Below, piece by piece: positions 40,513-63,520 of a stretch of 64,000 bases of DNA (positions are counted from its first letter, which is position 1; each line of letters begins with the position of its first letter). The notes under the pieces are model-generated. The model was not told the origin of the DNA. It did not search any database and saw only the letters and a list, made by a program, of their open reading frames with translations. The DNA lies in assembly GCF_006345805.1 (NCBI RefSeq), contig NC_043024.1, forward strand, positions 18,352,001 through 18,416,000, given 5' to 3'. The position numbers and the translations under genes are program-made. The DNA is from Octopus sinensis. Its lineage: Eukaryota.

Positions 40513-40565
40513 TATATATATATATATAAATGGAGTTTAAAGCAGGTATAATTCAAATACTTTTA

Positions 40566-40651
40566 CTTTCGACACATGTTTCAAAGATATCACTGATATT
40601 ATTCCAAAGGAATAAATGTTGTAAAACAATGTAATCTTCTCTTCAGAGAAG
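40566..40651 (-). ncRNA. Type I hammerhead motif, near intact
   Basis: cttct CTGAAGA gaagat..atcttt GAAAC ATGT GTC gaaag: 6-bp stem II, GUC triplet, imperfect stem I. Confidence 0.65.
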
Positions 40652-41023
40652 TGAAGAAATGAAACTCATCAATAAGACATTTTAACAGAAAATGATAGGT
40701 ATGTATAGTGGTTTACTGAACGCTATTAATATTGTTTGAAAAAACGTTATATGATATAACGTCAAAAGTAGCCTATAGAAAGAGGAGGGATATTTTTTTA
40801 GTGAATGTTGAATATAAAAGAAAATTAATGTTTAAATTATATATAATGATAGAGATTACTGATATGAACCAAAGGTGTGTTTTTGCCAATGTTTACATCG
40901 GTATGCAAGCTCTATAACCGTGTTTACTAGGGGAGTTTTAGAAAAAATAATGAAAAATAGTTCAGAATTATAGAGATTTTTTCCATGTTAATTGTTAACA
41001 AGGGAAAAATACACTCATCTATT

Positions 41024-42397: not shown

Positions 42398-43161
42398 TAT
42401 ATAATAATATATATATATTATATACACACATATATATATAATGATATTTATATATATGTAAATATATATATCATTATACAGTAAAAAATCTGATAACATT
42501 AATGTTGACATGAATCCTTCCTTGATATCTTTTTAGTGCAGCGAATAACTTTCAATCAAGCTGTGTAACACAACTTGGTGATTTTGAAAAGCAGGAGGAA
42601 AAAAGTCCTTTAGGGCAATGAATAAAAATTTAATTACATGTAGCCATGGAGTTCAAATACCTATCAAATAGTTATTATTGAAAATTGATTTTGCCTTAAC
42701 CATTTTCTTACGGTACATTTCATGTGTGTAGGGTTGTATATGCGATTAGTGTGTTGGGCATGTTTGTGAGTATGGTTCTGTGCTTAACCCAACTATATCT
42801 CCAGGCTTATGAGTGTGTGTGTATATAAATATATATACATACATATATATATAAATGTCTCAGTCTATCTATCTGTCTATTATCTATCTATCTATGTACA
42901 TGTACATATGTTTTTATATGTATATATATGCATATATATATGTATGTGTATATATATATATATATGTATACATATATATAAATATATTTATATATATATA
43001 TATATATATATGTCATATAATATATATGTCATATAATATATATGTAGATATATATATATATATATATACATACACATATATGTAGATATATATATATACA
43101 CACACGTATACATCTTTATACATATATACATAGTTAATCAATATATGTGTGTGTATACTTG

Positions 43162-43200
<39 letters not shown>

Positions 43201-43886
43201 AGGTATGTACATGTGTGGGTGTTCCATATTGAATTCCATTTTATCTGAAGAATATATAAATTTACCTGTTAGGGTATTCACAAGAGTGTATATGCATATG
43301 TTTATATATGTGTGTATATAGAATGTTATCCTTATATGAAAATATATTCGTTCCTATATACGTCTGTATCTATCTGTAATTTTCTGTGCGTTTGTGTGCG
43401 TGTGCAGTATGTATACGTATCCATGCACATATACGTATACATGTGTATATATTTATATACATGCATTTATATACATATATATACATACGCATACTCTTAT
43501 ATACATGTGCGTGGGTGTGTGTGAGAGAGAGAGTGTGTGTGTCTATTCAGAGAGGCACCAATATCCATGCAATGTTCAGAATGTGTTAAAAAAATTGACT
43601 TTTAATCTAATATCCTATATATTTCTTTTTACCGATTCCTCTGCTACGCAGGAATGGTAAATGGCTGGGAGACAAACCATCATTCCATCATGCCATGTAA
43701 ACATTGATGAGAAACACAAGAATTTTCTCATATCATAGCAGGAAATCTGGAAGACAAACCGATAACGAAAAAACAAACTCTTAAACACAAAAATTATTTA
43801 GATGTTTTCTTTCTGTCCTGTTGGTTCCAGGTTCAATCTCACTGTAGAGCTCTGCATGACAATAACAAACATCCTTTATATATTTA

Positions 43887-44170
43887 CTAGCAGTATCGCC
43901 CGGCGTTGCGGTTTGTTTCGACCCTTTAGAATTGGAATTTTTGGAAAGTAAAAATTTTGCATAATGTAAGCTTGTTATTCTCTTTAAGTGAGCAATTTTT
44001 CTGGTTGAAATACACCGAAAAATGGCGACACAGCAGTCAAAAAATCGTAAAAAATAGGGATTTTCATAGTAAAAAGGCACCCTTTTGATGTAAATAATTT
44101 TTGGTGTTAACATGGTCCGATTTGAATTTTTTCTTCTATGGAAGGAAGAGCAAGCCTTATACATATATAT
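43887..44170 (-). mobile_element. Short Helitron-type element
   Basis: Minus-strand 3' end gcaacgccgggcgatactgCTAG-t matches 41460-41856; the interior differs. Confidence 0.7.
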
Positions 44171-44799
44171 ATGATGATATATATATATATTAATACGAAA
44201 AAACCCTCCAGGCTACTTCCCGAAAATTCATTTTTTGCTGAATTTCTACAATGTTTACGGCAATTTGTTTTTATATCTTGATTTTTTATTTTTCATGCAA
44301 TTTACGCATGCTTGCACGCGTGATGAACACAGTTCACGTCAAACAGCTGACTGAGTAAAGTTCACTATTCAATGCATGAGATAAGGCCTAAACAAACACA
44401 TTATCGATTTCTGCCCTTGCGAGATGAATTTCGGAACAGAAATAGCGCAGTTCAATTTTCATTTGCCTAAACTTTAAGTGACCCATTTATGCCCAAGGTG
44501 CCATGCAGTGGGACTGAACCCGGAACCATGTGGTTGGTAAACAAGCTACTTACCACACAGCCACTCCTGCGTCAGTTTGGCAATAAAAAAAGAGCCTGAT
44601 AGAATAAGTGCCAGGCTTAGCAGAAAATAAGTACAGGGGTCAAGTCTTTTAACTGAAAATTCTTCAAGGCAATGCCCCAGCATGGCCACGGTCTGATGAC
44701 TGAAATTAGTGAACGATGAATGATGAAGAACTTCACCAAGACCTCAAAGCATCAAGAAAATGCATGAATAACTCAAAGCAATGGGAATAAATAAGTATT

Positions 44800-45183
44800 G
44801 TGGAATCACTCCTTCGGTTACGACGATGAGGGTTCCGGTTGATCCGAATCAACGGAACAGCCTGCTCATGAAATTAACGTGTAAGTGGCTGAGCACTCCA
44901 CAGACACGTGCACCCTTAACGTAGTTCTCGGGGATATTCAGCGTGACACAGAGAGTGACAAGGCCGGCCCTTTGAAATACAGGTACAACAGAAACAGGAA
45001 GTAAGAGTGAGAGCAAGTTGTGGTGAAAGAGTACAGCAGGGATCACCACCATCCCCTGCCGGAGCCTCGTGGAGCTTTAGGCGTTTTCGCTCAATAAACA
45101 CTCACAACGCCCGGTCTGGGAATCAAAACCGAGATCCTACGACCGCGAGTCCGCTGCCCTAACCACTGGGCCATTGCGCCTCC
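44800..45183 (-). mobile_element. SINE family C
   Basis: Same head as 63031-63330 but a different 3' tail. Confidence 0.8.
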
Positions 45184-45419
45184 ACTTGACAGAGTAATAA
45201 TCTGTATGTGAAAGGATTAAACCATCCATGTCAGGCCCATATAATCTACCTCTTTTATGTTCAAACTGGCCTAATCTGGTCTCTCACACCTACCCTACAA
45301 TGTCATTGAAGTCTCAAAACTACAAGATAATGCATGATTAATTGCAAATAATACAGATAAATAAGAATTACATTTGACAGAGTAATCAGAATGATGGTGG
45401 AGTTAAGAGAATACTTTAC

Positions 45420-45621
45420 TCTCTCTCTTACTCTTACTTGTTTCAGTCATTTGACTGCGGCCATGCTGGAGCACCGCCTTTAGTCGGGCAAATCGACCCT
45501 GGGACTTATTCTTTGTAAGCCCAGTACTTATTCTATCGGTCTCTTTTGCCGAACCGCTAAGTGACGGGGACGTAAACACACCAGCATCAGTTGTCAAGCA
45601 ATGCTAGGGGGACAAACACAG

Positions 45622-45660
<39 letters not shown>

Positions 45661-45830
45661 CATTATACAACAGGCTTCTTTCAGTTTCCGTCTACCAAAT
45701 TCACTCACAAGGCATTGGTCGGCCCGGGGCTATAGCAGAAGACACTTGCCCAAGATGCCACGCAGTGGGACTGAACCCGGTACCATGTGGTTGGTTAGCA
45801 AGCTACTTACCACACAGCCACTCCTGCGCC
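45420..45830 (-). mobile_element. SINE family A
   Basis: Full head, core and 3' half. Confidence 0.85.
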
Positions 45831-46635
45831 TATGCTTGGAAAATATTAAAAGCATTCTGGAGGCGTTTTACGAATATAATTTTGGTTTCTCATGTTTTTG
45901 AGAAGAGTAGTGGAAGAAGATTAGCTTCGTTATCTTTTCGATTTTCTTTAATTATCTTCTCCAGATACGGAATAGTTTATATTCCAATTCCAAAAAAAAA
46001 AAATGGAGTTTTTTCTGGATTAATCCATGATACACTGATTAAAGTTTCTTATTTGAAATGTTGTTAATCTTATATGGCATCCGTAGAGTTAGAATCTGTG
46101 TTTATCAAAATATATTTCTGTGTGGATAGCATCATCATCATCATCATCATCATCATCAATCGTTGTCAATCATCATCATCAATCATTATTATCATTAATC
46201 ATCATCATCATTGTTATCAACATCATCATCACCACTATCATCAAGTATTTTCATCATATTCGTCATCATCATCATCGCCATCATCATCAACATCATCATC
46301 ATCATCACTATCATCAATCACTATCATCATCGTCATCATCATCATCATCATTTCATGTCCACTTTTTTACACTTGTATGGGTCATGCAATTTGTTGAAGC
46401 TGATTTTCTACAGCTGGATACCCCTCCTGTCACAAAGCCTCCTCTGCCTTCCAACTAAGATGATATTTCCCCCACAACCAGACATGTTTTCATTGAAGAT
46501 TGGAAATGAAGGATACTCCTTGCTTGATGGTAACACTCACTTGCAGATATGCCATGTCAAAGAAATGAAGCTGTAACAAACACACATATGTACATATATA
46601 AATATATAGATAGAGAGATAGACAGATAGATAGAT

Positions 46636-46668
<33 letters not shown>

Positions 46669-46788
46669 TATAATTATATATATATATATATTATATATAT
46701 AGATATATATATATAATATATATATATAATATATATATATTATATATATATAATATATATATAATATGTTTTTCCAACGGTTTCCTTT

Positions 46789-46877
46789 TTTCTTCCTGAA
46801 GAGAAAGACACAATATGGTCCCATTATTCAATCGGATTTTGGTAATTTGTGCCTTTCGAAACACGTGTAGAATGAAA
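46789..46877 (+). ncRNA. Type I hammerhead ribozyme motif, canonical core
   Basis: tttcttc CTGAAGA gaaag..ctttc GAAAC ACGT GTA gaatgaaa. Stem II is 5 bp and starts with G-C; the stem III loop ACGU is palindromic; stem I is 3+4 bp with a one-base bulge. Confidence 0.8.
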
Positions 46878-47084
46878 TAAAACGATTTCTGTTCAATCTG
46901 CGTTCAGCTCCATTTCTTCAATTCACCAATAATGTTTTAATTCAATTATCCGCCCCAATGCACGGTTGCAACGCCAGATGGTTGTACCTCCAACCGTGCT
47001 GTTTACTGCTGTGATTTTTGCTACTAAGGTATCGGTTAAACTTTTGATTAATCTACTACAAGATTATTCATCTTTCTATTTCAC

Positions 47085-47131
<47 letters not shown>

Positions 47132-47144
47132 GAATATATATATG

Positions 47145-47203
<59 letters not shown>

Positions 47204-47292
47204 TATGTATATATATATATGGATATATATTATATGTATATATATATAATATGTATATATATATATTATATATATATATATATATAATATAT

Positions 47293-47340
<48 letters not shown>

Positions 47341-47352
47341 ATATATAATATA

Positions 47353-47578
47353 GGTGGCAAGCTGGCAGAAACGTCAGCACGCCGGGCGAAATGCTTTGCG
47401 GCATTTCGTCTGTCGCTACGTTCTGAGTTGAAATACTGCCGAGGTCGACTTTGCCTTTCATCCTTTCGGGGTCGATTAAATAAGTACCAGTTGCGCACTG
47501 AGGTCAATGTAATCGACTTAATCCGTTTGTCTGTCCTTGTTTGTCCCCTCTGTGTTTAGTCCCTTGTGGGCAATAAAG
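47353..47578 (+). mobile_element. SINE family B
   Basis: Full head and Meta-like core. Confidence 0.82.
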
Positions 47579-48492
47579 AAATATATATGTATATATATAT
47601 ATAGTTTTAAGTATTAACAAAGAAAATGGAGTGAGTAATATATTTTATTGCATAATACAACAATTGTTTCATCATTGTCATATCTAAAAATCATTGCTGA
47701 AATACCTGAACTGAATTGATGCATCTACAAATATCTATACTGAATTAATACACGTAGATTCTAAATATTTCGATGAAAAATGCAGGCGCATGCATATTAA
47801 TATTCTTAAGTTATTACACCTGGAAAAGTACAGAACAAGATCTCTACAGTAGAATTTGCCTAATTCGTCACCTCTAAAGGAAACTAAAAATTACTTAAAA
47901 TTAAAATTCTATTGTACTTAAAATATTGCATATTATAATCCAATTTTTACAAACCAAATTAAAACTGCAATTTTTAGAAATAAAATATAATCCACTTATT
48001 TTTAAAAATAGCCAACGCATCCAGGAGGAGCCACTTGCCCTGTCAGGGCAAAGTTAGTTTGTTAGTCGAAATTCATGCAAAATAAAAATAATGTCTGCAA
48101 TTACTTGAAAATTGATTTACGTACTTTTGGCAAATTTAGCTTATACGATAACTTTTTTCATTTGGAATATTTTTTGAGAAGATTAGCACCACAACACTCG
48201 GAGCTAAACAAAAACAAACTTTTACACAAAAACGAAATGTTTAGGTTTAAAATTTGCTTGTAGGCGTTACCACTGTTTTCGGTACATTTGGCCCCGGTAG
48301 ATGTTTTATTTAAGATTTCTTTGATATAAGTAACATCATGGGATTCCTGTATCTGAGATCTATAAGAAAAGTTGAATTTAAGTAGAGTTTTGTTTTGAAA
48401 GAAAAATAACATATGGAGTCGATTTCAGGAGTAATCTCATTTTTTCGATGGTTTTCACATCAGTACTTCTTTCTACTGAATATTTTTCATAT

Positions 48493-48670
48493 AGGCGCAG
48501 GAGCGGCTGTGTGATAAGTAGCTTGCTTACCAACCACATGGTTCCGGGTTCAGTCCCACTGCGTGGCACCTTGGGCAGGTGTCTTCTACTATAGCCTCGG
48601 GCCAACCAAAGCCTTGTGAGTGGATTTGAAAGAAGCCCGTCGTATATATGTATTATATAGATATATATAT

Positions 48671-48717
<47 letters not shown>

Positions 48718-48900
48718 TATGCATGTGTGTGTTTGCGTGTCTGTGTTTGTCCCCTAGCATTGCTTTTGTGTTCGGCAAAAGAGACCGATAGAATAAGTAC
48801 TGGGCTTACAAAAGTCCCGGGGTCGAGTTGCTCGATTAAAGGCGGTGCTCCAGCATGGCCGCAGTCAAATGACTGAAACAAGTAAAAGAGAGAAAGAGAG
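48493..48900 (+). mobile_element. SINE family A
   Basis: Full head, core and 3' half, with small deletions. Confidence 0.85.
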
Positions 48901-49207
48901 AAAGAAAAGCGATATAACTAATATGAATAGATTCCTGTCGTGGAAATCAATCGTATAAGCTAAAATAAAATATAGATTTATTTTTAAAAATATATATGGA
49001 CTCAAAGTCGATTTCAGGCGTTATTCTTCCGTTTGTGACTTCACGTATTTGACTCAGACATTTTTCTACTGAACCAATTTTCAAATATTTTTTAGCTCGA
49101 TGTGTAGTTTAGGATGTGACCAATCTAAAAATATAAACATCATCTAATTTGGTTAAAAACTGAGTTTGTGGCAAAGCATAGAAGTGGTCGTGAATAAATA
49201 TTGACCT

Positions 49208-50248
49208 TTTACTCTTTTACTTGTTTCAGTCATTTGACTGTGGCCATGTTGGAGCACCGCATTTAGTCGAGCAAATCAACCCCTGGACTTATTCTTTGTA
49301 AGCCTAGTACTTATTCTATCGGTCTCTTTTGCCGAACCGCTAAGCTACGGGGACGTAAACACATCAGCATCGGTTGTCAAGCGTTGTTGGGGAGACAAAC
49401 ACAGACACACAAACATACACCCCCTCACACACATATATATATAGGATCTTTTCCTTTTGAACGGCAGTTTTCAACACAATTTTTAGTTAACTAAACACTT
49501 TTAAACTTCGTATACTGGTAGAATGTGTTTATAAAACATATTTTTCTCTTGGTTTTATTGAGAAAATTCTATAGTTTGTAAGATATTTCTTCTGAAAATC
49601 CGAGCATTTCGGCAATTTTAACCAATCGATTACCTCCATTCAACTAAAATCATTTGCTGCGTCTAAAACTGAGACAACATCCTGTAACTAACCCTAAACC
49701 TCCCCCTAACCCTAACCCTACATTTTTTTAAAATTGTTAAATTAATTTAATTCCATTGCTTTAGTTTTTTTTTACATGCGCAACAATCAAATTAATTTAA
49801 CAATTAAGAAAAAGAAATTTAGGGTTAGGGTTAGGGTTAGGGTTAGTTACAGAATGTTGTCTCGGTTTTAGACGCAGCAAATGATTTTAACTCAAAAGAG
49901 AGCATAGGATTGGTTAAAATTCGAAAAATTAAACTACGTTAAATAAAACAAATTACAATTTTCTCAAAAAAGCCAAGAGAAAAAATGTTTTATTTTGACA
50001 CATTCTACCATTATACGAAGTTTTAAAGTGTTTAGTTGACTAGAAATTGTCTGCCGTTCAAAAGGAAAAGATCCATATATATACATACACATATCTATGA
50101 CAAGCTTCTTTCAGTTTCCGTCTACCAAATCCACTCACAAGGCTTCGGTCGATCCGAGGCTATAGTAGAAGACACTTGCCCAAGGTGCCACGCAGTGAGT
50201 CTGAACCCAGAACCATGTGGTTAGCAAGCAAGCTACTTACCACACACC
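49208..50248 (-). mobile_element. SINE family A split by a MITE
   Basis: 3' half at 49208-49443; head and core at 50075-50248. Confidence 0.85.
49444..50074. mobile_element. Long-TIR MITE (631 bp) containing inverted telomeric repeats
   Basis: Termini GGATCTTTTCCTTTTGAACGGCAG..CTGCCGTTCAAAAGGAAAAGATCC with imperfect TIRs of about 280 bp. (CCCTAA)n at about 49690-49720 and (TTAGGG)4 at about 49819-49845. atatatata on both flanks. Confidence 0.88.
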
Positions 50249-50665
50249 CAAAGAATATTATTCACACACTACCGTGTGTGAATAATATTTTTTGAAAAGA
50301 TTAGCACCACGACACTCTTGATGAGATCTATCATATGAAGTTAGATTTTGAATTTGATTTTAGGCGTTACCACTTTTTTCAGCGCATTTGGCCCCAGTAG
50401 TTCTACGTCTATTTGTAGTGTCCTGTACTCACGTATATATATTTATATATGCATGTATATATACATGTAGATGTAGGTACGTACATATATGTATGTATGT
50501 ATGCATATATTTTATTTATTACACTATTGTATGACTGATCGCCCTCGCGTCGATTCGATTCGATTCGTTCGTTTCGTTCCGTTCTTCTTCTCCAAGTACT
50601 GTTATATATATATATATATATTATATATTATATATATATATATATATAATATATATATATATATA

Positions 50666-51174
50666 TGATCAAAATAAAAAAATAAAAATAAAAACATGAG
50701 GCGAAGGATTCAGCGGTACAATGTTCGGGCCTTTATTAGACAGATTCATAACAAATCATAATGTATGTCTGTGGCCTCTTCAGCCGCGCACAACAGCTTC
50801 CACAAGGAAATGTGTTACTTCCGAAATTCTGGTTGGGGATGCAAATCTTCTCGTTCCCGTACGACATAATGCGGCAGCAGCATCGAATTGAATCGTCCAT
50901 CTCCTTCTTCTCTCAGTGTAGAATGAGAGAAGAAGGAGATGGACGATTCAATTCGATGCTGCTGCCGCATATGTCGTACGGGAACGAGAAGATTTGCATC
51001 CCCAACCAAGAATTTCGGAGTAGTAACACATGTCCTTGTGGAAGCTGTTGTGCGCGGCTGAAGAAGGCCACAGACATACATTATGATTTGTTATGAATCT
51101 GTCTAATAAAGGCCCGAAACATATGTACCGCTGAATCCTTCGCCTCATGTTTTTATTTTATTTTATTTTGATCA
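50666..51174. repeat. 509-bp near-perfect palindrome (arms about 250 bp, 8-nt loop gtgtagaa)
   Basis: 50666-50915 is the reverse complement of 50924-51174, differing mainly by 1-nt indels. Confidence 0.95.
51054..51131 (+). ncRNA. Type I hammerhead motif in the right palindrome arm (mirror copy at 50713-50787, minus strand, damaged)
   Basis: gcgg CTGAAGA a ggcc..ggcc c GAAAC ATAT GTA ccgc. Confidence 0.7.
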
Positions 51175-51429
51175 ATTTACTCCACCACCTACACACCAAA
51201 CGGTATACACAGGTGCTTATAATTATCAATACTCACCCCGAATTTTCTACACTCAACTAATATATATAATATATATATGTATATAATAAATATAAGAGAG
51301 TGGTCACTATATTGCTCACTCTAGCACCAGTTAATCCAAAAGGTTTCAACCACGAAAATACATGTTTCCCATGAAGCCAGTACGACTGTTAGCTCACACG
51401 GACAGGGCAAGTAAAAAATAACAAAAATA

Positions 51430-51524
51430 CAGATTATTTTGGGACAATTGTTTCGCTATTAATGAATTAAATGTAATATTACTTACAAAAAAATCCATTG
51501 TAGCTCGTCAGCCAAGACTATCTG
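51430..51524 (-). ncRNA. Type I hammerhead ribozyme, array unit 1
   Basis: ttgg CTGACGA gcta..tagc GAAAC AATT GTC ccaa; predicted cut after C at 51443. Confidence 0.88.
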
Positions 51525-51953
51525 GATGAAATCCACTCAATCACACGCCAGATTTTACCATACGATAAATACGCGTGTGGTTCAATTGATGACATCCGAC
51601 GTTATAATTCAAATGCCCCAACAACAGCGCGCCAACTTTCACGGAAAACAAATACAGCATTTAGAAATAACTGCAGCATAATTATAATTAATAATAAGGG
51701 TGAGAGAATTAGATACTAATTTAATAGTATATTTATTCAAACCAAGTGGCCTAGTGCTACGAGAAACCTGGATTATTATAAATTTTATAACATATAATAT
51801 TTTTACAAAATAAATATAAGAGAGTGGTCACTATATTGCTCACTCTAGCACCAGTTAACCAAAAGGTTTCAACCACGAAAATACATGTTTCCCATGAAAG
51901 CCAGTACGACTGTTAGCTCACACGGACAGGGCAAGTAAAAAATAACAAAAATA

Positions 51954-52046
51954 CAGATATTTTGGGACAATTGTTTCGCTATTAATGAATTAAATGTAAT
52001 TACTTACAAAAAAATCCATTTGTAGCTCGTCAGCCAAGACTATCTG
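51954..52046 (-). ncRNA. Type I hammerhead ribozyme, array unit 2
   Basis: cagata-gtc-ttgg CTGACGA gcta..tagc GAAAC AATT GTC ccaa-aa-tatctg; predicted cut after 51966. Confidence 0.9.
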
Positions 52047-52488
52047 GAGAATGAAATCCACTCAATCACACGCCAGATTTTACCATAACGATAAATACGC
52101 GTGTGGTTCAATTGATTACATCCGACGTTATAATTCAAATGCCCCAACCAACAGCGCGCCAAACTTTCACGGAAAACAAATACAGCATTTAGAAATAACT
52201 GCAGCATAATTATAATTAATTAATAAGGGTGAGAGAATTAGATACTAATTTAATAGTATATTTATTCAACACCAAGTGGCCTAGTGCTACGAGAAACCTG
52301 GATTATATAATATTTTATAACATATTATAATATTTTTACAAAATAAATATAAGAGGAGTGGTCACTATATTGCTCACTCTAGCACCAGTTAATCCAAAAG
52401 GTTTCAACCACGAAAATACATGTTTCCCATGAAAGCCAGTACGACTGTTAGCTCACACGGACAGGGCAAGTAAAAAATAACAAAAATA

Positions 52489-52580
52489 CGATTTTTTGGG
52501 ACAATTGTTTCGCTATTATGAATTAAATGTAATATTACTTACAAAAAAATCCATTGTAGCTCGTCAGCCAAGACTATCTG
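52489..52580 (-). ncRNA. Type I hammerhead ribozyme, array unit 3
   Basis: Same core and stems; predicted cut after 52500. Confidence 0.88.
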
Positions 52581-52894
52581 GATGAAATCCACTCAATCAC
52601 ACGCCAGATTTTACCATAACGATAAATACGCGTGTGGTTCAATTGATTACATCCGACGTTATAATTCAAATGCCCCAACCAACAGCGCGCCAAACTTTCA
52701 CGGAAAACAAATACAGCATTTAGAAATAACTGCAGCATAATTATAATTAATTAATAAGGGTGAGAGAATTAGATACTATTAATAGTATATATTATTCAAC
52801 ACCAAGTGGCCTAGTGCTACGAGAAACCTGGATTATTATAATATTTTATAACATATTATAATATTTTTACAAAATAAATATAAGAGAGTGGTCA

Positions 52895-54945
52895 CTTGAA
52901 CCATGTTAATAGCTTAGGAGATTAATTTAGGATTTCGATTTCTCGGTTTTGATCAAACTTCCCAGCTAGTTTGCACACTATGACAACACCATTGTTACGT
53001 TTTCATTAGTCTGTGTAATGTCCTTTCTTTTTATTTCAGTTTCTCCAGTTTTTGGGTGAACCACGCTAATAGCGTCTCTCTTCTCTAGGAACAATGGGAC
53101 GTGGAAAAGGACTTAACGATGAAGAGAAGTCTGTCATCATCAATGAAAGTGCGAAAGGCACTTCTCTTCACATTCATTGCCGAGAAGTTAGGTTGTCATG
53201 TGGACACAGTTAGACGATTGCTGAAGGACCGTTCACCAAAGAAGAAATGACTCGATTGTGGGAGCTCTAATTCTGTAACAACTAGGGATTTAAGAAATAT
53301 TGACCGCAAGTTTCGTGGGAAACCTGGACAAACAAGCAATGCTATTTTCACCGCCTCAGAACTTCCTCATGTACCGAAAAACCACCAGAAATCGCATCCA
53401 CGGGACCACAGCTCCAGTGCGAGAACTCTTGAAACTGACTTCTTTAGGAATTTGTGGAATTTGAGGCTTCAATAGGCCTAAAAGTACATGACTTTAGACA
53501 CGAGTTGTGTTCTGTTCACTAGGGTGACGGTTGGGCAAATGTTGAGTCTATTTTGGAGATGAGCATCACCAACAGGGTAGAGGAGTCATGTTGTGGGTTG
53601 GGTTGGTATCATTCAACCTATCTTGAATTCCTCTGTGTTTCAATTAATTTCTAATGTAATCATAAATTTAGTCTGGTTTCATTAAACAACTATAACTGTT
53701 TTATTTATCAATATATTAATGTGATTTTTGGAAGATAATTTAATAAAAGGTTCTCAACCAATTCTATACCATAATGTTTGTCACTAAGTGACTCTAATTA
53801 CAGGTAAATATAGGTAAATTCAACAAAATATAAAATTATTAAAATTTTTGTTCAAACATTGTTATAGAAAATGGGTTATTAGCTAATATTCAATTGGGTA
53901 TACAACAAAATTTTACTATAGAAGAGTTGTACTGGATCATCAGGTGAATTTAAAACACAAAAGGCAGGTGTACCATGAAGATATAAGTAAAACGAAAGAC
54001 TTTTTTCTAATTTATGGAGATCGGCCTACTGCAATCTCCTGAAAGAGATTTTGAATTCCTGGCTAGATGACAATGCTCCCCCCCCCACCACTCTGCTAGG
54101 ACCACCTAAACATTACTAGGGTCTTACGGCACACAAGCTGAAAGGTTGATGGTGTCGCCGCCAACATCTCCGGATCCCAACCCTATCGGAAATTTTTGTT
54201 CCATCATTAAACAAGATGTTTATGCCGATAGACGCCAATTTACGTTGAATGATATCTTATGGACGACCATCAAAGCTGCTGCAGAAGCAGTCCAGCCTGA
54301 TACTATTAAGAAATTGATGGATTTCATGACTAATATGGTTTTTGAAGTTACTCGTCGGTATGGCGCTCATGTGGCTAAATAATTCATTATGTCAATAATT
54401 GTCACAATATTATTATGGTTTTCTTTTGAATATATACTCAATGTATATAGGCGCAGGAGTGGCTGTGTGGTAAATAGCTTGCTAACCAACCACATGGTTC
54501 TGGGTTCAGTCCCAGTGCGTGGCATCTTGGGCAAGTGTCTTCTGCTATAGCTCCTGACCGACCAATGCCTTGTGAGTGGATTTGGTAGACGGAAACTGAA
54601 AGAAGCCTGTTGTATATATCTATCTATATATATATATATATATGTATGTGCGTGTTTGTGTGTCTGTGTTTGTCCCCCCAACATCGCTTGACAACCGATG
54701 CTGGTGTGTTTACGTCCCCGTCACTTAGCGGTTCGGCAAAAATGAAACCGATAAAATAAATACTATGCTTACAAAGAATAAGTCCTGGGGTCGATTTGAT
54801 CGACTAAAGGCGTTGCTCCAGCATGGCCACAGTAAAAGACTAAAAGAGTGTGCAAACTAGCTGGGCAAAGTTTTATCAGAATCGATTCACAGAAAACCGA
54901 GAAATCCTGAATTTCCTTCCTAAGCTATCAGCGTGGTTCTGGGTG
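52895..54945 (+). mobile_element. Decayed Tc1-like transposon with ~90-bp imperfect TIRs and a SINE insertion
   Basis: Left end ..gatagcttagga..ttctcggtttt..cccagctagtttgcacact is inverted at 54847-54945. N-terminal HTH MGRGKGLNDEEKSVII..IAEKLGCHVDTVRRLL at 53094; C-terminal PPTSPDPNPIGNFCSIIKQDVY at about 54150. Confidence 0.75.
54449..54846 (+). mobile_element. SINE family A
   Basis: Full head, core and 3' half. Confidence 0.85.
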
Positions 54946-55099
54946 CATATATGCATACATGGAGAAACAATTTCTGGGTGTTTATACATATCGAAAAACA
55001 GTTTCTCAATTTATCGATAAAAAATATCCTTATTCAATCAAAGGATTTATACCTGGATTTATTGTTACAAAGGGTAAGCGAATTCATATAAAGGAAGAG

Positions 55100-57100
55100 A
55101 TAGCATGCTTTTCACTACGACCTTAAAGGGAAGCGAATAAACAACATTGAAAGAGAAACCCCCCATAGAATTCCGCTTTGCTTAATTCTGAAAAAGATCT
55201 TATCAACATTCTGAAAAAAATTAAAATTCTCAAACCATACAAACTCTAGCCAAAAAAGACGAGCGAAAATTATCTGTGCGATTAAAAGTTCTCCCAATCT
55301 CCATGTGCTTTTCGACAAAACAGGAAATCTTTGTTCACTGCCTGTTGATTTATATAATAAATTCTTATTGAAGGAACTGAATTCCAAATATAAAATAACA
55401 GCTAGTAATAAGTTGAACGATATTAATAAGAAACATTATAATTTCATTAAGGAAGTAAATTTATTAGATACCTCTGAGCTGTACCCCTCTGAAGTTCCTT
55501 ATTTTACTTTGAAAGACCACAAAGAAAGTTCCGAGAGCAAACCCACCGTTCGATTAATATGTCCTACTAAATCAGACCTAGGTAAGTAAGATTAGTAAAT
55601 TTATTATAGATAAAATTTTCCCATATATTAAGGACAATGTAAATTTACCACTGTGGGACGGTACTGGTGATGTCATCACTCGGTTTTGTTCTTTAGACGA
55701 TAAAAACAGAAGCTATTTTTTACAGAGTGGCTATAGGCGTAGGAGTGGCTGTGTGGTAAGTAGCTTGCTTACCAATCACATGGTACCAGGTTCAGTCCAA
55801 CTGCGTGGCACCTTGGGCAAGTGTATTCTACTATAGCCTCGGGCCGACCAAAGTCTTGTGAGTGAATTTGGTAGATGGAAACTGAAAGAAGCCCGTCGTA
55901 TATATGTATATATGTATGTGTGTGTTTGTGTGTCTGTGTTTGTCCCCCCAACATCGCTTGACAACCGATGCTGGTGTGTTTACGTCCCCGTAACTTAGCG
56001 GATCGGCAAAAGAGACCGATAGAATAAGTACTAGGCTTACAAAGAATAAGTCCTGGGGTCGATTTGCTTGACTAAAGGCGGTGCCCCAGCATGGCCACAG
56101 TCAAATGACTGAAACAAGAAAAAGAGTTAAAAGAGTAAAAAAAAGAGTATCAGTAGTTATTGCCAATCCATAATACTTGATCTCTTGTATAATGCTATAA
56201 GATTTGCTTAAAACTTTAAGAATATTTCCCCTTTGGAAAGAGATGTGATAACTACTTTAATATATTTTAAGGAATAGAATTGGACGCGCAAAGACCTCCT
56301 TGACGATTTTGACGTAACAATGGGATCTTCTGATTCTGTGCAGATTACCGACATAGTGGGATTATTCTTACTTTCTGAAATCAATGAGAAAGTTAATTAT
56401 AAAGTTAATAATAAGAAATGTTTTTTATGTTTAAATGAAAATTTTTTCATCCTCTCTGCAAAATTTCCTCTTCTTCACCTTAGTGATGAGCGAAATATTT
56501 CTTGTCTACATACAGGAAAATTTGTTTTTTCTAGAGATAAATTTATAATTAACTGTTCATATTCTGTTGACTAATATATCAACAACGTTTTTTTCAAACC
56601 CTTTTATTATCTCTTTGATTTACTTAGTAATTTATACTTCTCACCCCTATTTATTATTCATGTATTATTTATGTACCACCAATACAATTTAGGCTAACTT
56701 GTATATTTGCTTCCCCCATTTTCTGGCTCTATATTGATAAAGAACCCTTCTTCTGTCCCCATTGTAAGTATTTCTAGTTTATTAATTTCATTTAACTATT
56801 ACTTATTAATTAATATTTAATTTGCTTTGCGGGAGCCACTGTTTTATCGGAAGCGTATATTATTGTTAAATGATCGAAATACGAGAGTAGAAAAAACAGC
56901 CAACAACTGATGAAGGGTCGTTTTTAATGTCGTTTCTTTTGTTTCCCATTTGTGTCTTTCGTTGTTCGAAAGAATTGTTCATATTCCATGTACTCATGTT
57001 TCGTATTTTTTATTAATGTTTTTGTACTCGTTTCGTGACGTCCAGTACCCACATATGCACATATATACCATAGATGTATGTACATATACGTATGTATATA
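55100..57100 (+). pseudogene. Neptune-type Penelope-like element, internally deleted and SINE-interrupted, with a terminal-repeat-like 3' end
   Basis: LFDKTGNL..Y.KFL; YFTLKDHKE..PTVRLICPTKSDLGK; DFDVTMGSSDSVQITDIVGLFLL (RT motif B); KCFLCLNENFFIL..ISCLH (endonuclease tail). Confidence 0.8.
55735..56148 (+). mobile_element. SINE family A
   Basis: Full head, core and 3' half, inserted in the PLE RT. Confidence 0.85.
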
Positions 57101-57289
57101 TATATATTACTTATATTATATATATATATTATTTATATTATATATATTAAAAATTTCTTTAAAAAATTTTCCATACACCCTTTTTCATTAAAATTTACCT
57201 GCCTTTTTATAATTTTTCCTTGCCTATCAATTCTCCACGTGCGGTCAACACAACCCCACCATTTATATATATATATATATATATATATA

Positions 57290-57800
57290 GTGCAATAAAT
57301 AAAATATATGCATACATACAAGCATATATGTACGTAACTACATCTACATGTATATATACATGCATATGTAAATATATATACGTGAGTACAGGACACCACA
57401 ACTAGACGTAGAACTCAACGAGAAACGAAAACGGAAAAACCATTTTTTTACAACAGAAAAACAGAGTACAGGACATATTACACTAAGAAAAATCCCCTAT
57501 CATCAGCTGTCACTAGTTCGACTCCAGCGTGTTTCGAAGGTAAGACAGGACACGACTCGCCAAACTAATCCTTCCTGCGAGAGAATTAAAATAAAATTAC
57601 CTCGCAGAGGGGTAAAAACAAGCAAGAAAAAATGTAACACAAACAGGACGTAAAAACGATACAAATAAAACTACAAAATAAAATACAAGATAAAAATACA
57701 TGTACAAGAAAATACAATACGAGAAATAAAAATAAAATAAAATACGAGAAATAAAAATAAACAAGAAAACAAACAAGGAAACAAACGAAAAGACCTTTTT
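57290..57800 (-). repeat. PLE-type terminal repeat copy (family Q), inverted relative to 56800-57100
   Basis: Shares gtcctgtactc..catgtagatgtag.tacgtacatatatg..gcatat.ttttatttatt with 50411-50525 (+), 61685-62100 (-) and 62430-62520 (-). Confidence 0.7.
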
Positions 57801-57886
57801 TCTGGCTTAGACGGAGGAGGTTCTAGCAGCGCATGGGAACACAAATATGTGTCTTTACAGTTTGAAAGCCGCGTGTATATATATAT

Positions 57887-57917
<31 letters not shown>

Positions 57918-57992
57918 TATATATTATAATATATATATATATATATATGTGGTGTGTATATATATATATATATATAATATATATATATATAT

Positions 57993-58030
<38 letters not shown>

Positions 58031-58104
58031 CTAATATATAATATATATATGTATATATATATAATATATATATGTATATATATATATATATATTATATAT
58101 TATA

Positions 58105-58152
<48 letters not shown>

Positions 58153-58247
58153 CGGGAAGCTTTATGAAAATAAACAAAGACGAAGGCAGGGAAAAACAAA
58201 CGAACAATTGTATTAGTATGGCGCTCAGGAAATATAAATAAAACAAG

Positions 58248-58285
58248 TCTTTAACGTTTCGAGCCTACGCTCTTCAACAGAAAGA
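58248..58285 (-). ncRNA. Minimal hammerhead variant in the PLE terminal repeat
   Basis: tcttt CTGTTGA a gagc-gtag-gctc GAA ACGT T aaaga: 5-bp stem I, 4-bp stem II, ACGU palindrome in place of stem III; A6 is replaced by U. Confidence 0.5.
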
Positions 58286-58464
58286 TACACAGAGAGAGAA
58301 GAAACACAGAAAGAAGGAGAGAAAAAAAATGCGTGCAGTAGCTAACGAATCAACATGGCGATCTGATTTCGGCCAGAGGTCAAAGATCAAACATGAGACG
58401 CGAGAGCGAAATAAGGGGAGATAATAGGGTTGATAAACGGGTTGAGGGACCAGCTAAAAGTGCG

Positions 58465-58780
58465 TGGGAGGGGTCTGGATGTGTGTATGTATAGGGTTGG
58501 TGTATGTATTAGTATGTATAAGGGTGTGTGTGTGTGTGTGTGTATGAGAGAGTATTAGTGCGTAAGATTGGTCTGGACGTGCGTATGTATGGGGTTGGTG
58601 TATGTATTAGTATGTATTAGTACGTATTGGTATGTATAGGTATGTGTGTGTGTGTGTGAGAGAGTATAAGTGCGTATGCGGGGTCTGGACGTGTGTATTT
58701 ATAGGGTTGGTGTAAGTATTAGTATGTACTAGTATGTATTAGTACGTATTAGTATGTATTAGTTGGTGTGTGTATTAGTA
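58465..58780. repeat. ~110-bp tandem repeat (3 units) followed by a purine-rich tract at 58820-59160
   Basis: ggtctgga.gtg.gtat.tat.gggttggtgta occurs at about 58471, 58570 and 58682. Confidence 0.8.
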
Positions 58781-60072
58781 TGGCACATCATATGGATGTG
58801 ATGTGTAAAGTCATGTGGTGTAGTGAGGAGAAGAGGGGGAGGGGAGAAGAGGGGGAGAAGGGGAGGGGAAGAAGAGGGGGAGGAGAAGGGGGAGAGGAGA
58901 GGATGGGGGAGAAGGAAGGGGAGGAGGGGATGAAGGAGGAAAGAGGGAGAGGGGGAGAGAGGGAGTGAGGGAGAGAGAGGGAGTGAGGGAGCAGGAGGGA
59001 AGGGGAAGAGGGAGGGAGAAAGAGGGAAGAAGGAAGGGGAGTAGGGGTGAAGGGGAGTAGGGTGAAGGAAGAAGAAGAGGATGAAGAAGTAGGGGTCGGG
59101 GGGAGAAAGGATAGGTGAGGGGGGGAGAGGGGGGTTAGATGAGGAGGGGGGGAGAGTTGAGACCAAATGGCGTATAAGAGCGAAGAGAGAAGATTAATTC
59201 TTGTTCACGGCGCAAACGGGAATCCGGATGGCCTCTGTGTAAGGACAAACCGAACACAGATAGGTGTTGCAAGGAGTGACCGGTGGAGCGGAAATGGCGT
59301 GAGACCGGTGTGTCGTTCGCAAGGTGGATGTCACGAAGGTGTTCCGCGAACCGGTCAGCCAAGCGGCGTCCCGTTTGTCCGATGTACAAGGAATTGCAGA
59401 GAGAGCAAGAGATGCAATAGATAATATTGCTGGAGGTGCAGGTGAAGGAGTGGATGATGGGATAGGGTCGATGGTGGGTGCTAGTGAGGCGGGTGGTGTT
59501 GGAGAGGTAAGGGCAAGTGCGGCAACGTGGGCGATATATATAAAGCACGATTTATTCGCGATCAGAGTTGTTCGAAAACCGAGGTACTACTTTATATACG
59601 TGTGTGCGTCTGTGTTTGCCCCCTCCACCCCTTCATCGCTTGACAACTGATACTGGTGTGTTTATATCTCTGTAACGTAGAGGTTCAGCAAAAGAGACAG
59701 AATAAATACTCGGCTTACAAAGAATAAGTCCTGGGGGGCGATTTCTTCGACTAAAACCCTCTACGATGGTGCGCCAGCATGGTTGCAGTCAAATGATTAA
59801 GGAAACGAATAAAAAAAAATAACCCTTACCTTTGCAAAAACAAAGTATAGTATCAATTGATTACACCTTTAGTGCCAAACACTTAAGATCATCAGCTGAG
59901 CTTACTGCATATATACACTACACCTTGCACACCTGTTCGTTTCAATGTTTGTTTATAGTGAAAAACTTGTGGCTTTGCAGAGTTGACTTTTGTTTCTCAC
60001 ATAGCTGGTATATATTTTTTATACCCTAAATTTATATACATACATACACACACTCACACACATACACACACG

Positions 60073-60130: not shown

Positions 60131-60189
60131 CACACCTAATACACATATATATATATACATATAGATGTATATCATATACATATATACTC

Positions 60190-60401
60190 TTTACTCTCTC
60201 TTTTACTCTTTTACTTGTTTCAGTCATTTGACTGTGGCCATGCTGGAACACCGCTTTAGTCGAACAAATCGACCCCTGGACTTATTCTTTGTAAGCCCAG
60301 TACTTATTTTATCGGTCTGTTTTGCCAAACCGCTAAGTTACGGGGACGCAAACGCACCAGCATCGATTGTCAAACGATACACACACACAACACACACACA
60401 C

Positions 60402-60445
<44 letters not shown>

Positions 60446-60649
60446 CGACATATATATACACACACATACATATATATATACTTATGTACGACGGGCTTCT
60501 TTCAGTTTCCGTCTACCAAATCTACTCACAAGGCTTTGGTCGGCCCGAAGCTATAGTAGAAGACACTGGCCCGAGGTGCCACGCAGTGGGACTGAACCCG
60601 GAACCATGTGGTTGGTTAGCAAGCTACTTACCACACAGCCACTCCTACG
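60190..60649 (-). mobile_element. SINE family A
   Basis: Full head, core and 3' half. Confidence 0.85.
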
Positions 60650-61554
60650 CTAATGTATATATACGTGTATGTGTGAGAGTGTGTATTTCCACTACCACCA
60701 CCACTATCACCGCCACTGCCACTAGTGTTCATTTTCTTTGCATCCCTGTGACTTAACAGTTCAGCTAAAAGATCAATATAATAAGCACCAAGCTGAAAAA
60801 CCTACTGGTGTCGGTTTATTCAATAAAAAAACCCCTTTAAATGTTGTGCCTCAGCATGGCCACAGCTGAGTGAGTGTAGCCAGAAAATGTTAAAAGATAA
60901 AAGTTAGCACCTTTAGAATTTCCACGAGAATAAATTGAAAAAATCTATAAGTTTTAGACACCAGACATCTTGTCACTTGTATCACGTAAACATGTGGAAT
61001 CTATCATTACAGTGCCGATTGTTTACCAACGAGTCAGCAAGAACCAATTTGTCAAAGAATAGCACTAATATACGCTATTGGTACACATACATATCGATAT
61101 ACATGCGGAGACTCCCAAAGATGCAGACAGACGGAGCAAATGTCAATGCAAACAGTCAGTATGTTTTCAAAGACCATACATCATCAGTGAAAGTTCATTT
61201 ATATATGGTGTTTAACGAAGTAATTCGGTCGAACTGAGGGAAAACAAAAGAGCTAACCTTTCCAGGAAGCGGTTCTCGATAAATTAGAATTGATTAAAAC
61301 GAGGGAAATTGTCTCAAAACAATGATGAACAATTGATTGAAGAATTTCAGATACAATTGATTACAATTGGAATATTGGACTGGAAATTTAGGAAACAGAT
61401 TCTTTTTTTTTTTTCTGTTCTGCAGGAAAAGGTTCATTGTAGGTAATTCTCTTTTATTATAGTGTTCGGTCGACCAAAGTTTTGTGAGTAGATTTGGTAG
61501 ATGGAAATTGAAAGAAGCCCATTGTCTGTATAAGTATATGTATATGTATATCTA

Positions 61555-63330: not shown

Positions 63331-63520
63331 GTGATATATGTTTATAGTGAATGAAAGACAGGGGATGGAAGATACGAGAAATATAATTAATCACGACAGT
63401 TGTTTCGACACATCTAGCCTCGGTCCCTCACGAGTAGGATACTTTATAACTGGTTCATATATATATATGTATGTGTATGTATATCTATATCTATATTTAT
63501 TTATGTATATATATTTATAT

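What the first reader, a model, noticed from the sequence alone, without database searches (positions are those of the whole stretch)
51288..52896. Retrozyme-like tandem array: three ~530-bp non-coding units, each with a perfect type I hammerhead ribozyme
Seen on the minus strand of every unit: (cagata-gtc)-ttgg CUGACGA gcua..uagc GAAAC AAUU GUC ccaa-(aa-uaucug). The catalytic core is exact, with G10.1-C11.1, a GUC triplet, an extended stem II (aauggauu/aauucauu) and a minimal stem III whose ACAAUUGU palindrome permits dimeric folding between adjacent units. Predicted cuts at 52500, 51966 and 51443 would release monomers of 534 and 523 nt. The units differ almost only by small indels, encode no ORF and end with about 20 bp of terminal redundancy. 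Established: head-to-tail repeats with one HHR per unit define metazoan non-LTR retrozymes (newt satellite 2, schistosome Sm-alpha, cnidarian and bivalve examples), which yield circular RNAs and are thought to be mobilised by PLE reverse transcriptases. PLE RT and GIY-YIG remnants lie 2-7 kb away. Inference: a young cephalopod retrozyme family with a comparatively large monomer; I cannot confirm that it is undescribed.
Basis: partly seen in the sequence, partly recalled or inferred. Interest (0 to 1): 0.92.

Follow-up and report, generated by a model that had tools for sequence, protein, structure and literature searches.

The report
Hammerhead-ribozyme tandem repeat (retrozyme)
A 1.6-kb stretch holds three head-to-tail copies of a ~530-base non-coding repeat, each carrying an intact self-cutting hammerhead ribozyme; it is a new example of a known class of small mobile elements (animal "retrozymes") that ride on Penelope-like retrotransposons, not a new kind of system.

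Summary
On the minus strand, window 51285-52895 is three units (530, 534, 524 nt) plus a 23-nt terminal redundancy. Each unit has an exact type I hammerhead (HHR) core, a G10.1-C11.1 pair, a two-part helix I, a 49-50-nt helix II hairpin and a 2-bp helix III inside the palindrome ACAAUUGU. Predicted cuts release monomers of 534 and 523 nt. A strict descriptor expects 0.0017 such motifs per window. None of 121 chance matches to the same core strings elsewhere has the helices. No Rfam hammerhead model detects the motif. The monomer has no ORF, is 33% GC and folds far better than shuffles, more so on the HHR strand.

The window holds four other HHR-bearing insertions: two homologous solo elements with the same long-helix-II design, an internally deleted RT/GIY-YIG (Penelope-like) copy with a decayed motif of that design in its 3'UTR, and a second Penelope-like remnant with a minimal HHR. 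All five end in (TA)n.

Best reading: a non-autonomous, Penelope-dependent non-LTR retrozyme. Cleavage, circular RNA, copy number and the cephalopod origin could not be tested. This is a new member of a known kind, of moderate interest.

The parts
51285..52895 (-). Tandem array: 3 units plus a 23-nt terminal redundancy (1611 bp, 33% GC)
52366..52895 (-). Unit 1 (530 nt, array phase starting GTGACC)
51832..52365 (-). Unit 2 (534 nt)
51308..51831 (-). Unit 3 (524 nt)
51285..51307 (-). 23-nt terminal redundancy (GTGACCACTCTCTTATATTTATT), resembling a PLE 'tail'
   Evidence: PMC8557442 for PLE tails
52489..52581 (-). HHR copy 1: exact core, C17 at 52500, outer helix I reduced to 3 bp
51954..52047 (-). 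HHR copy 2: exact core, C17 at 51966, outer helix I 6 bp (CAGAUA/UAUCUG)
51430..51525 (-). HHR copy 3: exact core, C17 at 51443, outer helix I 5 bp
51966..52499 (-). Predicted self-cleaved monomer A (534 nt). Circular MFE -139.3 kcal/mol, z -5.96
51443..51965 (-). Predicted self-cleaved monomer B (523 nt). Circular MFE -136.6 kcal/mol, z -4.8
51258..51284 (.). (TA)n-like microsatellite abutting the array's 3' end (sense of the HHR); presumed target
46768..47085 (+). Context: solo element A inside (TA)n. Intact HHR core at 46796, cut after A46869 (GUA), 55-nt helix II, helix III palindrome ACACGUGU
40528..41020 (-). Context: solo element B, homologous to A. HHR core at 40646, C17 at 40571, 57-nt helix II, G10.1-U11.1. 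Both ends lie in (TA)n
54959..57049 (+). Context: internally deleted, SINE-disrupted RT/GIY-YIG (Penelope-like) copy 'PLE1'; ORF stop at 56572; 3' end runs into TA/CA-rich repeat
56907..56979 (+). Context: decayed long-helix-II HHR-like motif in the PLE1 3'UTR (CTGATGA, 54 nt, GAAAGAATTGTT), 335 nt after the stop
58151..59551 (-). Context: second PLE remnant 'PLE2': C-terminal CxxC/GIY-YIG ORF 59551-59138, 3'UTR, 3' end abutting (TA)n
58253..58280 (-). Context: PLE-type minimal HHR of PLE2 with one core change (A6 to U), an extra nt after A9, GAGC/GCUC helix II and ACGU palindrome

Best explanation
The array is one insertion of a non-autonomous, hammerhead-bearing retroelement of the metazoan 'non-LTR retrozyme' type.

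Proposed cycle:
1. The minus strand is transcribed as a multimer.
2. Each type I HHR cuts after GUC. This most likely happens when the palindromic helix III (ACAAUUGU) of two neighbouring copies pairs into an 8-bp helix.
3. [quoted passage not shown]
4. A host RtcB-type ligase circularises them into a compact, highly base-paired RNA.
5. The reverse transcriptase and GIY-YIG endonuclease of a Penelope-like element copy this RNA at a nick in a (TA)n microsatellite.
6. Going round the circle, or along a multimer, more than once gives an insertion of 3.04 units.

Shown here: the array, the intact ribozyme architecture, the structured strand-specific RNA fold, the absence of coding capacity, the (TA)n junction, and PLE copies in the same window that carry HHRs and use the same target.

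Inferred by analogy with published retrozymes: transcription, cleavage, circularisation and PLE-mediated reverse transcription.
For: Array and HHRs.

Not chance:
- The strict descriptor expects 0.0017 per window, against two independent loci observed.
- 0 of 121 chance matches to the core strings have the helices.

RNA properties:
- The HHR helices I and II are part of the MFE of both the 111-nt motif and the whole circular monomer.
- The HHR-sense strand folds at -139 kcal/mol (z -5.96) against -106 (z -3.8) for the complement.
- Helix III is unstable alone but gives -7.8 kcal/mol as a dimer.

Non-coding. GC 33%.

PLE link:
- RT/GIY-YIG copy at 54959-57049 with a decayed motif of the same design 335 nt after its stop. 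The unit's HHR lies 332 nt after the unit start.
- GIY-YIG remnant with a minimal HHR.
- A relative of PLE1 from another organism has a compact HHR with an 8-nt palindromic helix III 58 nt after its stop.
- All five HHR-bearing insertions have their 3' end in (TA)n, which covers 9.6% of the window.

The definition and life cycle of retrozymes come from PMC7229834, PMC7761336 and bioRxiv 10.64898/2026.07.22.740005. The PLE tails, tandem insertions and microsatellite bias come from PMC8557442.
Against: - No Rfam hammerhead model reports the motif even at E<=10.
- Helix II is about 50 nt instead of a 4-bp stem with a loop, so the usual loop 1/loop 2 contact cannot be read off, and activity is unproven.
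- Only one array is available. No second copy of this family could be found anywhere, so mobility of this particular family is not shown.
- The unit has no detectable primary similarity to either PLE 3' end in the window.
- The array ends neither at the cleavage site nor with a recognisable target-site duplication.
- (TA)n is common here, so each single junction is weak evidence.
Confidence: 0.65

Rival explanations
1. The array is a non-autonomous Penelope-like element, essentially a PLE 3'UTR/pLTR without the ORF. Its head-to-tail copies and 23-nt 'tail' were made directly by the PLE machinery through template jumping on linear RNA. The HHR only trims read-through or tandem transcripts, and no circular RNA serves as the transposition intermediate.
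For: - PLE insertions typically form partial tandems with 30-40-bp tails. Non-autonomous PLE derivatives that give multicopy head-to-tail insertions are described (PMC8557442).
- The array starts and ends at the same unit position, give or take 23 nt.
- The HHR lies 332 nt from the unit start, against 335 nt from the stop codon in PLE1.
- The array (-) and PLE1 (+) would lie head-to-head, 13 nt apart plus the junction, if the Tc1-like element between them were removed.
Against: - No sequence similarity between the unit and the PLE 3' ends in the window.
- The monomer is unusually well folded as a circle or rod, as in retrozymes with proven circular RNAs.
- The Tc1-like element and PLE1 are decayed, while the units differ by <1% in substitutions. 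This argues for separate, later insertion of the array.
Confidence: 0.2
2. The array is a local tandem duplication, a micro-satellite-like repeat of a sequence that happens to contain an old HHR. It is no longer (or never was) mobile, and the ribozyme has no present role.
For: Only three units at one locus are known. No other copy was retrievable. The outer helix I of copy 1 is weakened.
Against: All three cores are exact. The units are almost identical in substitutions. The RNA is strongly and strand-specifically structured. The junction with (TA)n and the co-occurring PLEs fit insertion rather than in situ duplication.
Confidence: 0.1
3. The copy number is an assembly artefact: a single unit, or a different number of units, was mis-assembled from noisy long reads.
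For: Differences between units are mostly 1-nt indels, 11-15 events against 1-4 substitutions. That is typical of uncorrected long reads.
Against: Assemblers usually collapse tandem repeats rather than expand them. The three units carry different indel sets and a few substitutions. The array has clean, unique flanks on both sides.
Confidence: 0.03
4. The hammerhead-like motif is a chance match in an AT-rich repeat.
For: There is no Rfam hit. A loose descriptor does give 0.07 chance hits per window.
Against: The strict descriptor expects 0.0017 per window. 0 of 121 chance core matches have the helices. Two homologous solo elements keep the same fold with different helix sequences. The tandem context is exactly the known one.
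Confidence: 0.01

Closest known systems
Metazoan non-LTR retrozymes (Cervera & de la Pena 2020, PMC7229834), e.g. Mytilus galloprovincialis 350-390-bp repeats and Acropora 220-240-bp repeats
   Same: Head-to-tail non-coding repeats with one type I HHR per unit. GC below 45%. No LTR, PBS or PPT. Highly self-paired monomer. Species-specific sequence. Co-occurrence with PLEs. A dimer-to-multimer array (here a trimer).
   Different: The monomer is 523-534 nt, against 150-450 bp in that paper. Helix II is a ~50-nt hairpin instead of a 4-bp stem plus loop 2. It is invisible to Rfam. Circular RNA and cleavage were not shown here.
Amphibian satellite 2 / axolotl HHR_Amex2 retrozymes
   Same: Weak helix III (2 bp plus tetraloop) embedded in a palindrome, which predicts cleavage as a dimer between neighbouring units.
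   Different: Unrelated sequence, a longer unit and a much longer helix II. The axolotl has about 10^5 copies; the copy number here is unknown.
Minimal HHRs in the pLTRs of Penelope-like elements (Cervera & de la Pena 2014, PMC4209133)
   Same: Type I topology, G10.1-C11.1, a palindromic helix III segment and a position near the 3' end of a retroelement that integrates into microsatellites. One such min-HHR is present in this window (58280-58253).
   Different: The array HHR has a real loop 3 and a two-part helix I, lacks the extra nucleotide after A9 and has a very long helix II. The units carry no RT/EN ORF and share no sequence with the PLE 3' ends here.
Non-autonomous PLE derivatives with multicopy head-to-tail insertions (e.g. 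MRC1/Chlamys, PMC8557442) and the proposal that retrozymes derive from PLE pLTRs (bioRxiv 10.64898/2026.07.22.740005)
   Same: A short non-coding element, a tandem insertion with a short terminal extension, a microsatellite target and an HHR layout like a PLE 3'UTR.
   Different: Sequence similarity to an autonomous partner, which is the key evidence in those studies, could not be shown here.
Plant LTR retrozymes (PMC4918200)
   Same: Non-autonomous elements with HHRs flanking a ~0.5-0.7-kb RNA that becomes circular.
   Different: Plants use type III HHRs inside LTRs, with PBS/PPT, 4-bp TSDs, GC above 55% and Gypsy-type RT. None of these features is present here.

Membership tests
Hammerhead ribozyme, type I | Conserved core C3 U4 G5 A6 N7 G8 A9 ... 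G12 A13 A14 ... A15.1-U16.1, H17 | tested here: met
   CUGACGA ... GAAAC AAUU GUC is exact in all three units
Hammerhead ribozyme, type I | Three helices around the core, with helix I open (5' and 3' ends) and a G10.1-C11.1 pair | tested here: met
   Helix I is UUGG/CCAA plus an outer stem. Helix II is GCUA/UAGC plus 8 bp. Helix III is AC/GU. Helices I and II are in the MFE. 0 of 121 chance core matches have them
Hammerhead ribozyme, type I | Short helix III with a palindromic loop (metazoan type I), allowing a dimeric active form | tested here: met
   ACAAUUGU is a perfect palindrome. Monomer hairpin 0 kcal/mol, duplex -7.8 kcal/mol. Feature as described in PMC4209133
Hammerhead ribozyme, type I | Recognised by the Rfam hammerhead covariance models (a detection criterion, not a defining one) | tested here: not met
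   No hammerhead family at gathering score or at E<=10. The likely reason is the ~41-nt insertion in helix II; that reason itself could not be tested
Hammerhead ribozyme, type I | Loop 1/loop 2 tertiary contact | tested here: inconclusive
   Both helices have an internal loop 4 bp from the core (GUC/AA and C/AA) that could substitute, but this cannot be judged from sequence
Hammerhead ribozyme, type I | Site-specific self-cleavage | not testable with these tools
   Needs in vitro transcription of monomer and dimer
Metazoan non-LTR retrozyme | Tandem repeat with at least two consecutive units, each with a complete type I HHR | tested here: met
   Three HHRs 534 and 523 nt apart. Operational criterion from bioRxiv 10.64898/2026.07.22.740005
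Metazoan non-LTR retrozyme | Non-coding, low GC, no LTR/PBS/PPT | tested here: met
   Longest ORF 55 aa with no homologues. GC 33%. No terminal repeats other than the units themselves
Metazoan non-LTR retrozyme | Monomer size in the described range | tested here: met
   523-534 nt lies outside the 150-450 bp of PMC7229834 but inside the 51-972 bp of the 2026 preprint
Metazoan non-LTR retrozyme | Highly self-paired monomer RNA | tested here: met
   Circular MFE -139.3 kcal/mol, z -5.96, 64% paired. The HHR strand is more stable than its complement
Metazoan non-LTR retrozyme | Co-occurrence with HHR-bearing PLEs in the genome | tested here: met
   Two PLE remnants in the window, each with an HHR or an HHR relic
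Metazoan non-LTR retrozyme | Expression as circular RNA | not testable with these tools
   No transcriptome of the source organism is available
Metazoan non-LTR retrozyme | Multiple dispersed copies (evidence of mobility) | tested here: inconclusive
   There is no other copy in the window. The source genome is not in the searchable collections
Terminal repeat (pLTR) of an autonomous PLE | Repeats flank an RT/GIY-YIG ORF, or match the 3' end of one | tested here: not met
   Units are contiguous and lack an ORF. There is no similarity to the 3' ends of PLE1 or PLE2 (z 0.2-2.7). PLEs elsewhere in the genome could not be examined

The most novel reading that the evidence does not exclude
This genome may hold a lineage-specific class of type I hammerheads with a ~50-nt helix II and an 8-nt palindromic helix III. 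Rfam misses this class and the usual descriptors may too (only Rfam was tested here). In this window it is shared by a retrozyme, by short solo elements and by the 3'UTR of one RT/GIY-YIG (Penelope-like) lineage, and all of them integrate into (TA)n. If this holds genome-wide, it would tie a particular retrozyme to a particular PLE lineage by ribozyme design and target site in an invertebrate. It would also mean that hammerhead and retrozyme counts in such genomes are strongly underestimated, since there are four such loci in 64 kb here. It may further explain the 'half-core' motifs 35-50 nt apart noted in PLEs that are said to lack HHRs (PMC8557442).
Probability: 0.3. Interest if true: 0.55.

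Novelty: new member of a known kind. Interest (0 to 1): 0.4.

Why it matters
Retrozymes are a recently recognised source of abundant circular RNAs in animals, and their link to Penelope-like elements is still mostly circumstantial. This locus adds a clean, apparently recent example in a lineage where none is described in the papers I could search. It also shows that a hammerhead with a long helix II escapes the Rfam hammerhead models. Finally, it offers, within one 64-kb window, a retrozyme, related solo elements and two PLE copies that share a (TA)n target. That gives concrete handles (ribozyme design, target site, unit layout) for testing PLE-dependent mobilisation. It does not reveal a new kind of system.

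Tried and rejected
- Rfam cmscan of the whole window at gathering score, and of 50800-53300 and 40000-60000 at E<=10: no hammerhead family. The only hits were hairpin-like microRNA models on palindromes and TA repeats.
- TRF: misses the array because the period exceeds 500.
- Looking for other copies of the unit:
  - exact look-ups of unit ORFs;
  - a protein search with all unit ORF translations joined;
  - a specific HHR pattern in metagenome, viral and prokaryotic genome contigs.
  All were empty.
- A generic pattern in metagenomes gave 120 loci that were all chance matches. I used them as a null control.
- Identifying the organism: exact look-up and homology search with the Tc1-like transposase gave no hit above 87% identity and none named to any cephalopod; the named hits were other animals (mostly spiders). 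'Cephalopod' therefore stays unverified.
- GIY-YIG homologues were about 50% identical fragments. Three loci were fetched (L001, L002, L123); none resembles the unit, Rfam finds nothing in L001 and L002, and L002 holds one perfect min-HHR.
- Pfam and PDB searches of the RT-like fragment were empty. It was identified only through the representative-protein search and motif inspection.
- RNAalifold on a MAFFT alignment of the two solo HHRs did not recover the HHR fold because the alignment was not structural.
- Local and global alignments of the unit against solo A/B and both PLE 3' ends: no similarity.
- tRNA-like promoter: none.
- Supplementary files with PLE consensus sequences are not held.
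Full report
**1. What is there**

On the minus strand, window 51285-52895 consists of three head-to-tail units of 530, 534 and 524 nt. They are followed by a 23-nt repeat of the unit start, GTGACCACTCTCTTATATTTATT. TRF does not report the array because the period exceeds its 500-nt limit.

Each unit contains CUGACGA, then 49-50 nt, then GAAAC-AAUU-GUC (3 matches, 0 expected). C17 is at 52500, 51966 and 51443.

**2. Ribozyme anatomy**

- The core is exact (C3 U4 G5 A6 C7 G8 A9, G12 A13 A14, A15.1-U16.1, C17).
- G10.1-C11.1 is present.
- Helix I is UUGG/CCAA, then an internal loop (GUC/AA), then an outer stem of 6, 5 or 3 bp in copies 2, 3 and 1.
- Helix II is GCUA/UAGC, then a small internal loop, then AAUGGAUU/AAUUCAUU and a distal hairpin.
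- Helix III is only A-U and C-G, closed by AAUU.

Helices I and II are part of the minimum-free-energy fold of the isolated motif and of the whole circular monomer. ACAAUUGU is a perfect palindrome. On its own it does not fold (0 kcal/mol), while two copies form an 8-bp duplex of -7.8 kcal/mol. This is the classical argument for cleavage as a dimer (PMC4209133, PMC7229834).

**3. Is it chance?**

- A loose descriptor gives 0.07 hits per shuffled window.
- A strict one requires an exact core, helix I >=3 bp, helix II >=4 bp and a fully palindromic helix III segment. It gives 0.0017 per window, against two independent loci observed.
- As an empirical null, I took 121 chance matches to the same core strings in metagenome contigs. 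None has both helices.

The one negative result is that no Rfam hammerhead model reports any of these motifs, at gathering score or at E<=10. I attribute this to the ~41-nt insertion in helix II, but I could not test that explanation.

**4. The RNA**

The unit has no ORF above 55 aa. A search with all its ORF translations found nothing. GC is 33%.

As a circle, monomer A folds at -139.3 kcal/mol (z -5.96 against dinucleotide shuffles). Its complement reaches only -105.7 (z -3.8). Monomer B behaves the same way. The stronger fold of the HHR strand points to that strand as the functional RNA.

**5. Differences between units**

Pairs of units differ by 1-4 substitutions but by 11-15 indel events, mostly single bases. 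This ratio is the reverse of normal divergence and looks like long-read assembly noise. The true units are probably more than 99% identical.

**6. Boundaries and neighbours**

The 3' end of the array (in the HHR sense) abuts a (TA)n-like tract at 51258-51284. Beyond that lies a ~490-bp near-perfect palindrome (50676-51168), and then more (TA)n.

The 5' end abuts the terminus of a decayed Tc1-like element. That element runs from about 52896 to 54945, has 79% identical TIRs and an HTH/DDE remnant, and contains a SINE insertion. I saw no target-site duplication.

The array starts and ends at the same unit position to within 23 nt, not at the cleavage site. This resembles the short 'tails' of PLE insertions (PMC8557442).

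**7. Other hammerheads in the window**

*Solo A (46768-47085, +)* lies inside a (TA)n block. It has an intact core, a 55-nt helix II, the palindrome ACACGUGU and a GUA triplet.

*Solo B (41020-40528, -)* also has both ends in (TA)n. It is homologous to solo A across the HHR and its flanks (global z 11). It keeps helix II with different base pairs. It carries a CpG-to-TpG change in the palindrome and a G-U at 10.1-11.1.

*PLE1 (54959 to about 57049, +)* is an RT/GIY-YIG element.
- Its N-terminal fragment has 403 homologues.
- The long homologues (P0170, P0181) show RT motifs and a C-terminal CxxC/GIY-YIG-like domain.
- tblastn maps a frameshift, a SINE insertion and an internal deletion before the stop at 56572.
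- 335 nt after the stop lies CTGATGA, 54 nt, GAAAGAATTGTT, a decayed motif of the array's design. A relaxed search expects 0.056 hits per window.
- In the retrozyme unit, the HHR core lies 332 nt after the unit start.
- A relative from another organism (L126) has a compact type I HHR with the palindrome ACCAUGGU 58 nt after its stop.

*PLE2 (59551-58151, -)* is a C-terminal CxxC/GIY-YIG ORF (Pfam E 3e-4; 55 homologues). It is followed after 858 nt by a PLE-type minimal HHR with one core change, A6 to U (0 hits in 20 shuffles).

All five HHR-bearing insertions have their 3' end in (TA)n or TA/CA-rich repeat, which covers 9.6% of the window. If the junctions were independent, the chance of this is about 1e-5. 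Microsatellites may, however, also arise at such ends.

**8. What it is not**

The unit shows no primary similarity to solo A/B or to either PLE 3' end. It is therefore not the terminal repeat of the PLE copies at hand.

If the Tc1-like element is removed, the array (-) and PLE1 (+) lie head-to-head with 13 nt of TA-rich sequence between them. This recalls the inverted arrangements of PLE insertions. However, the Tc1-like element and PLE1 are decayed while the array is nearly uniform, so I favour independent insertions into one microsatellite.

**9. Relatives elsewhere**

None could be found, and the source genome appears not to be in the searchable collections. The cephalopod assignment is therefore unverified. 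Copy number, mobility and expression of this family are open.

**10. Comparison with the literature**

The locus meets the operational and descriptive criteria for metazoan non-LTR retrozymes (PMC7229834; PMC7761336; bioRxiv 10.64898/2026.07.22.740005). Those papers report:
- monomers of 150-450 bp, and later 51-972 bp;
- GC below 45-50%;
- weak palindromic helix III;
- self-paired circular RNAs;
- co-occurrence with, and probable derivation from, PLEs.

In the library I could search, no paper describes a retrozyme or this HHR design in cephalopods. One genome paper only counts 235 Rfam Hammerhead_1 hits in the giant squid. The long helix II is the one unusual structural trait.

**11. Verdict**

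Interest is moderate (0.4).

Noticed in passing
window 46768-47085 (+): A ~320-bp solo element inside a (TA)n block. It has an intact type I HHR (core at 46796, cut after 46869, GUA triplet), a 55-nt helix II and the helix III palindrome ACACGUGU.
   Followed up: yes
window 40528-41020 (-): A ~490-bp solo element, homologous to the one at 46768-47085, with both ends in (TA)n. Its HHR core is at 40646 with C17 at 40571. It has G10.1-U11.1 and a CpG-to-TpG change in the helix III palindrome.
   Followed up: yes
window 54959-57049 (+): An RT/GIY-YIG (Penelope-like) copy with a frameshift, a SINE insertion (about 55780-56150) and an internal deletion. A decayed long-helix-II HHR-like motif sits in its 3'UTR at 56907-56979. 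A further C-terminal remnant of the same protein family lies at 18055-18709 (-).
   Followed up: partly
window 58253-58280 (-): A PLE-type minimal hammerhead with a single core change (A6 to U). It lies 858 nt downstream of the GIY-YIG remnant ORF (59551-59138), and the element's 3' end (58151) abuts a long (TA)n.
   Followed up: yes
window 50676-51168: A ~490-bp near-perfect palindrome (arms differ by 9 substitutions and 5 indels) flanked by (TA)n on both sides, next to the array. It gives sub-threshold hits to microRNA hairpin models only.
   Followed up: partly
window 49640-49900: A foldback element whose arms carry (CCCTAA)n and (TTAGGG)4.7 in inverted orientation around a ~90-nt loop. No hammerhead motif was found next to it.
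   Followed up: no
window about 52896-54945 (+): A decayed Tc1-like element (HTH and DDE remnants, 79% identical TIRs starting CACTTGAACC / CACCCAGAACC) that contains a SINE. It separates the array from the PLE copy.
   Followed up: partly
window 51285-52895: Unit-to-unit differences are dominated by 1-nt indels (11-15 events against 1-4 substitutions). This suggests an unpolished long-read assembly, so other small indels and frameshifts in this window may be artefacts too.
   Followed up: partly
whole window, e.g. 48381-48917, 54370-54720, 55772-56100, 60165-60750, 63394-63860: Many copies of one SINE-like repeat, visible as a recurring spurious peptide (...GTEPGTMWLVSKLLTTQPLLR), often next to TA or CA microsatellites. 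TA microsatellite makes up 9.6% of the window.
   Followed up: no
L002 9224-9256 (+); L126 2346-2376 (+): Intact hammerheads in PLE loci of other, unidentified animals. L002 has a minimal HHR with the palindrome AUAU. L126 has a compact type I HHR with a U-U at the base of helix II and the palindrome ACCAUGGU, 58 nt after the ORF stop. Rfam finds nothing in L002 at gathering score; L126 was not scanned.
   Followed up: partly
window 39915-40436 (+): A Helitron-type Pif1 helicase fragment (Pif1 2B domain, E 2e-15) immediately beside solo element B.
   Followed up: no
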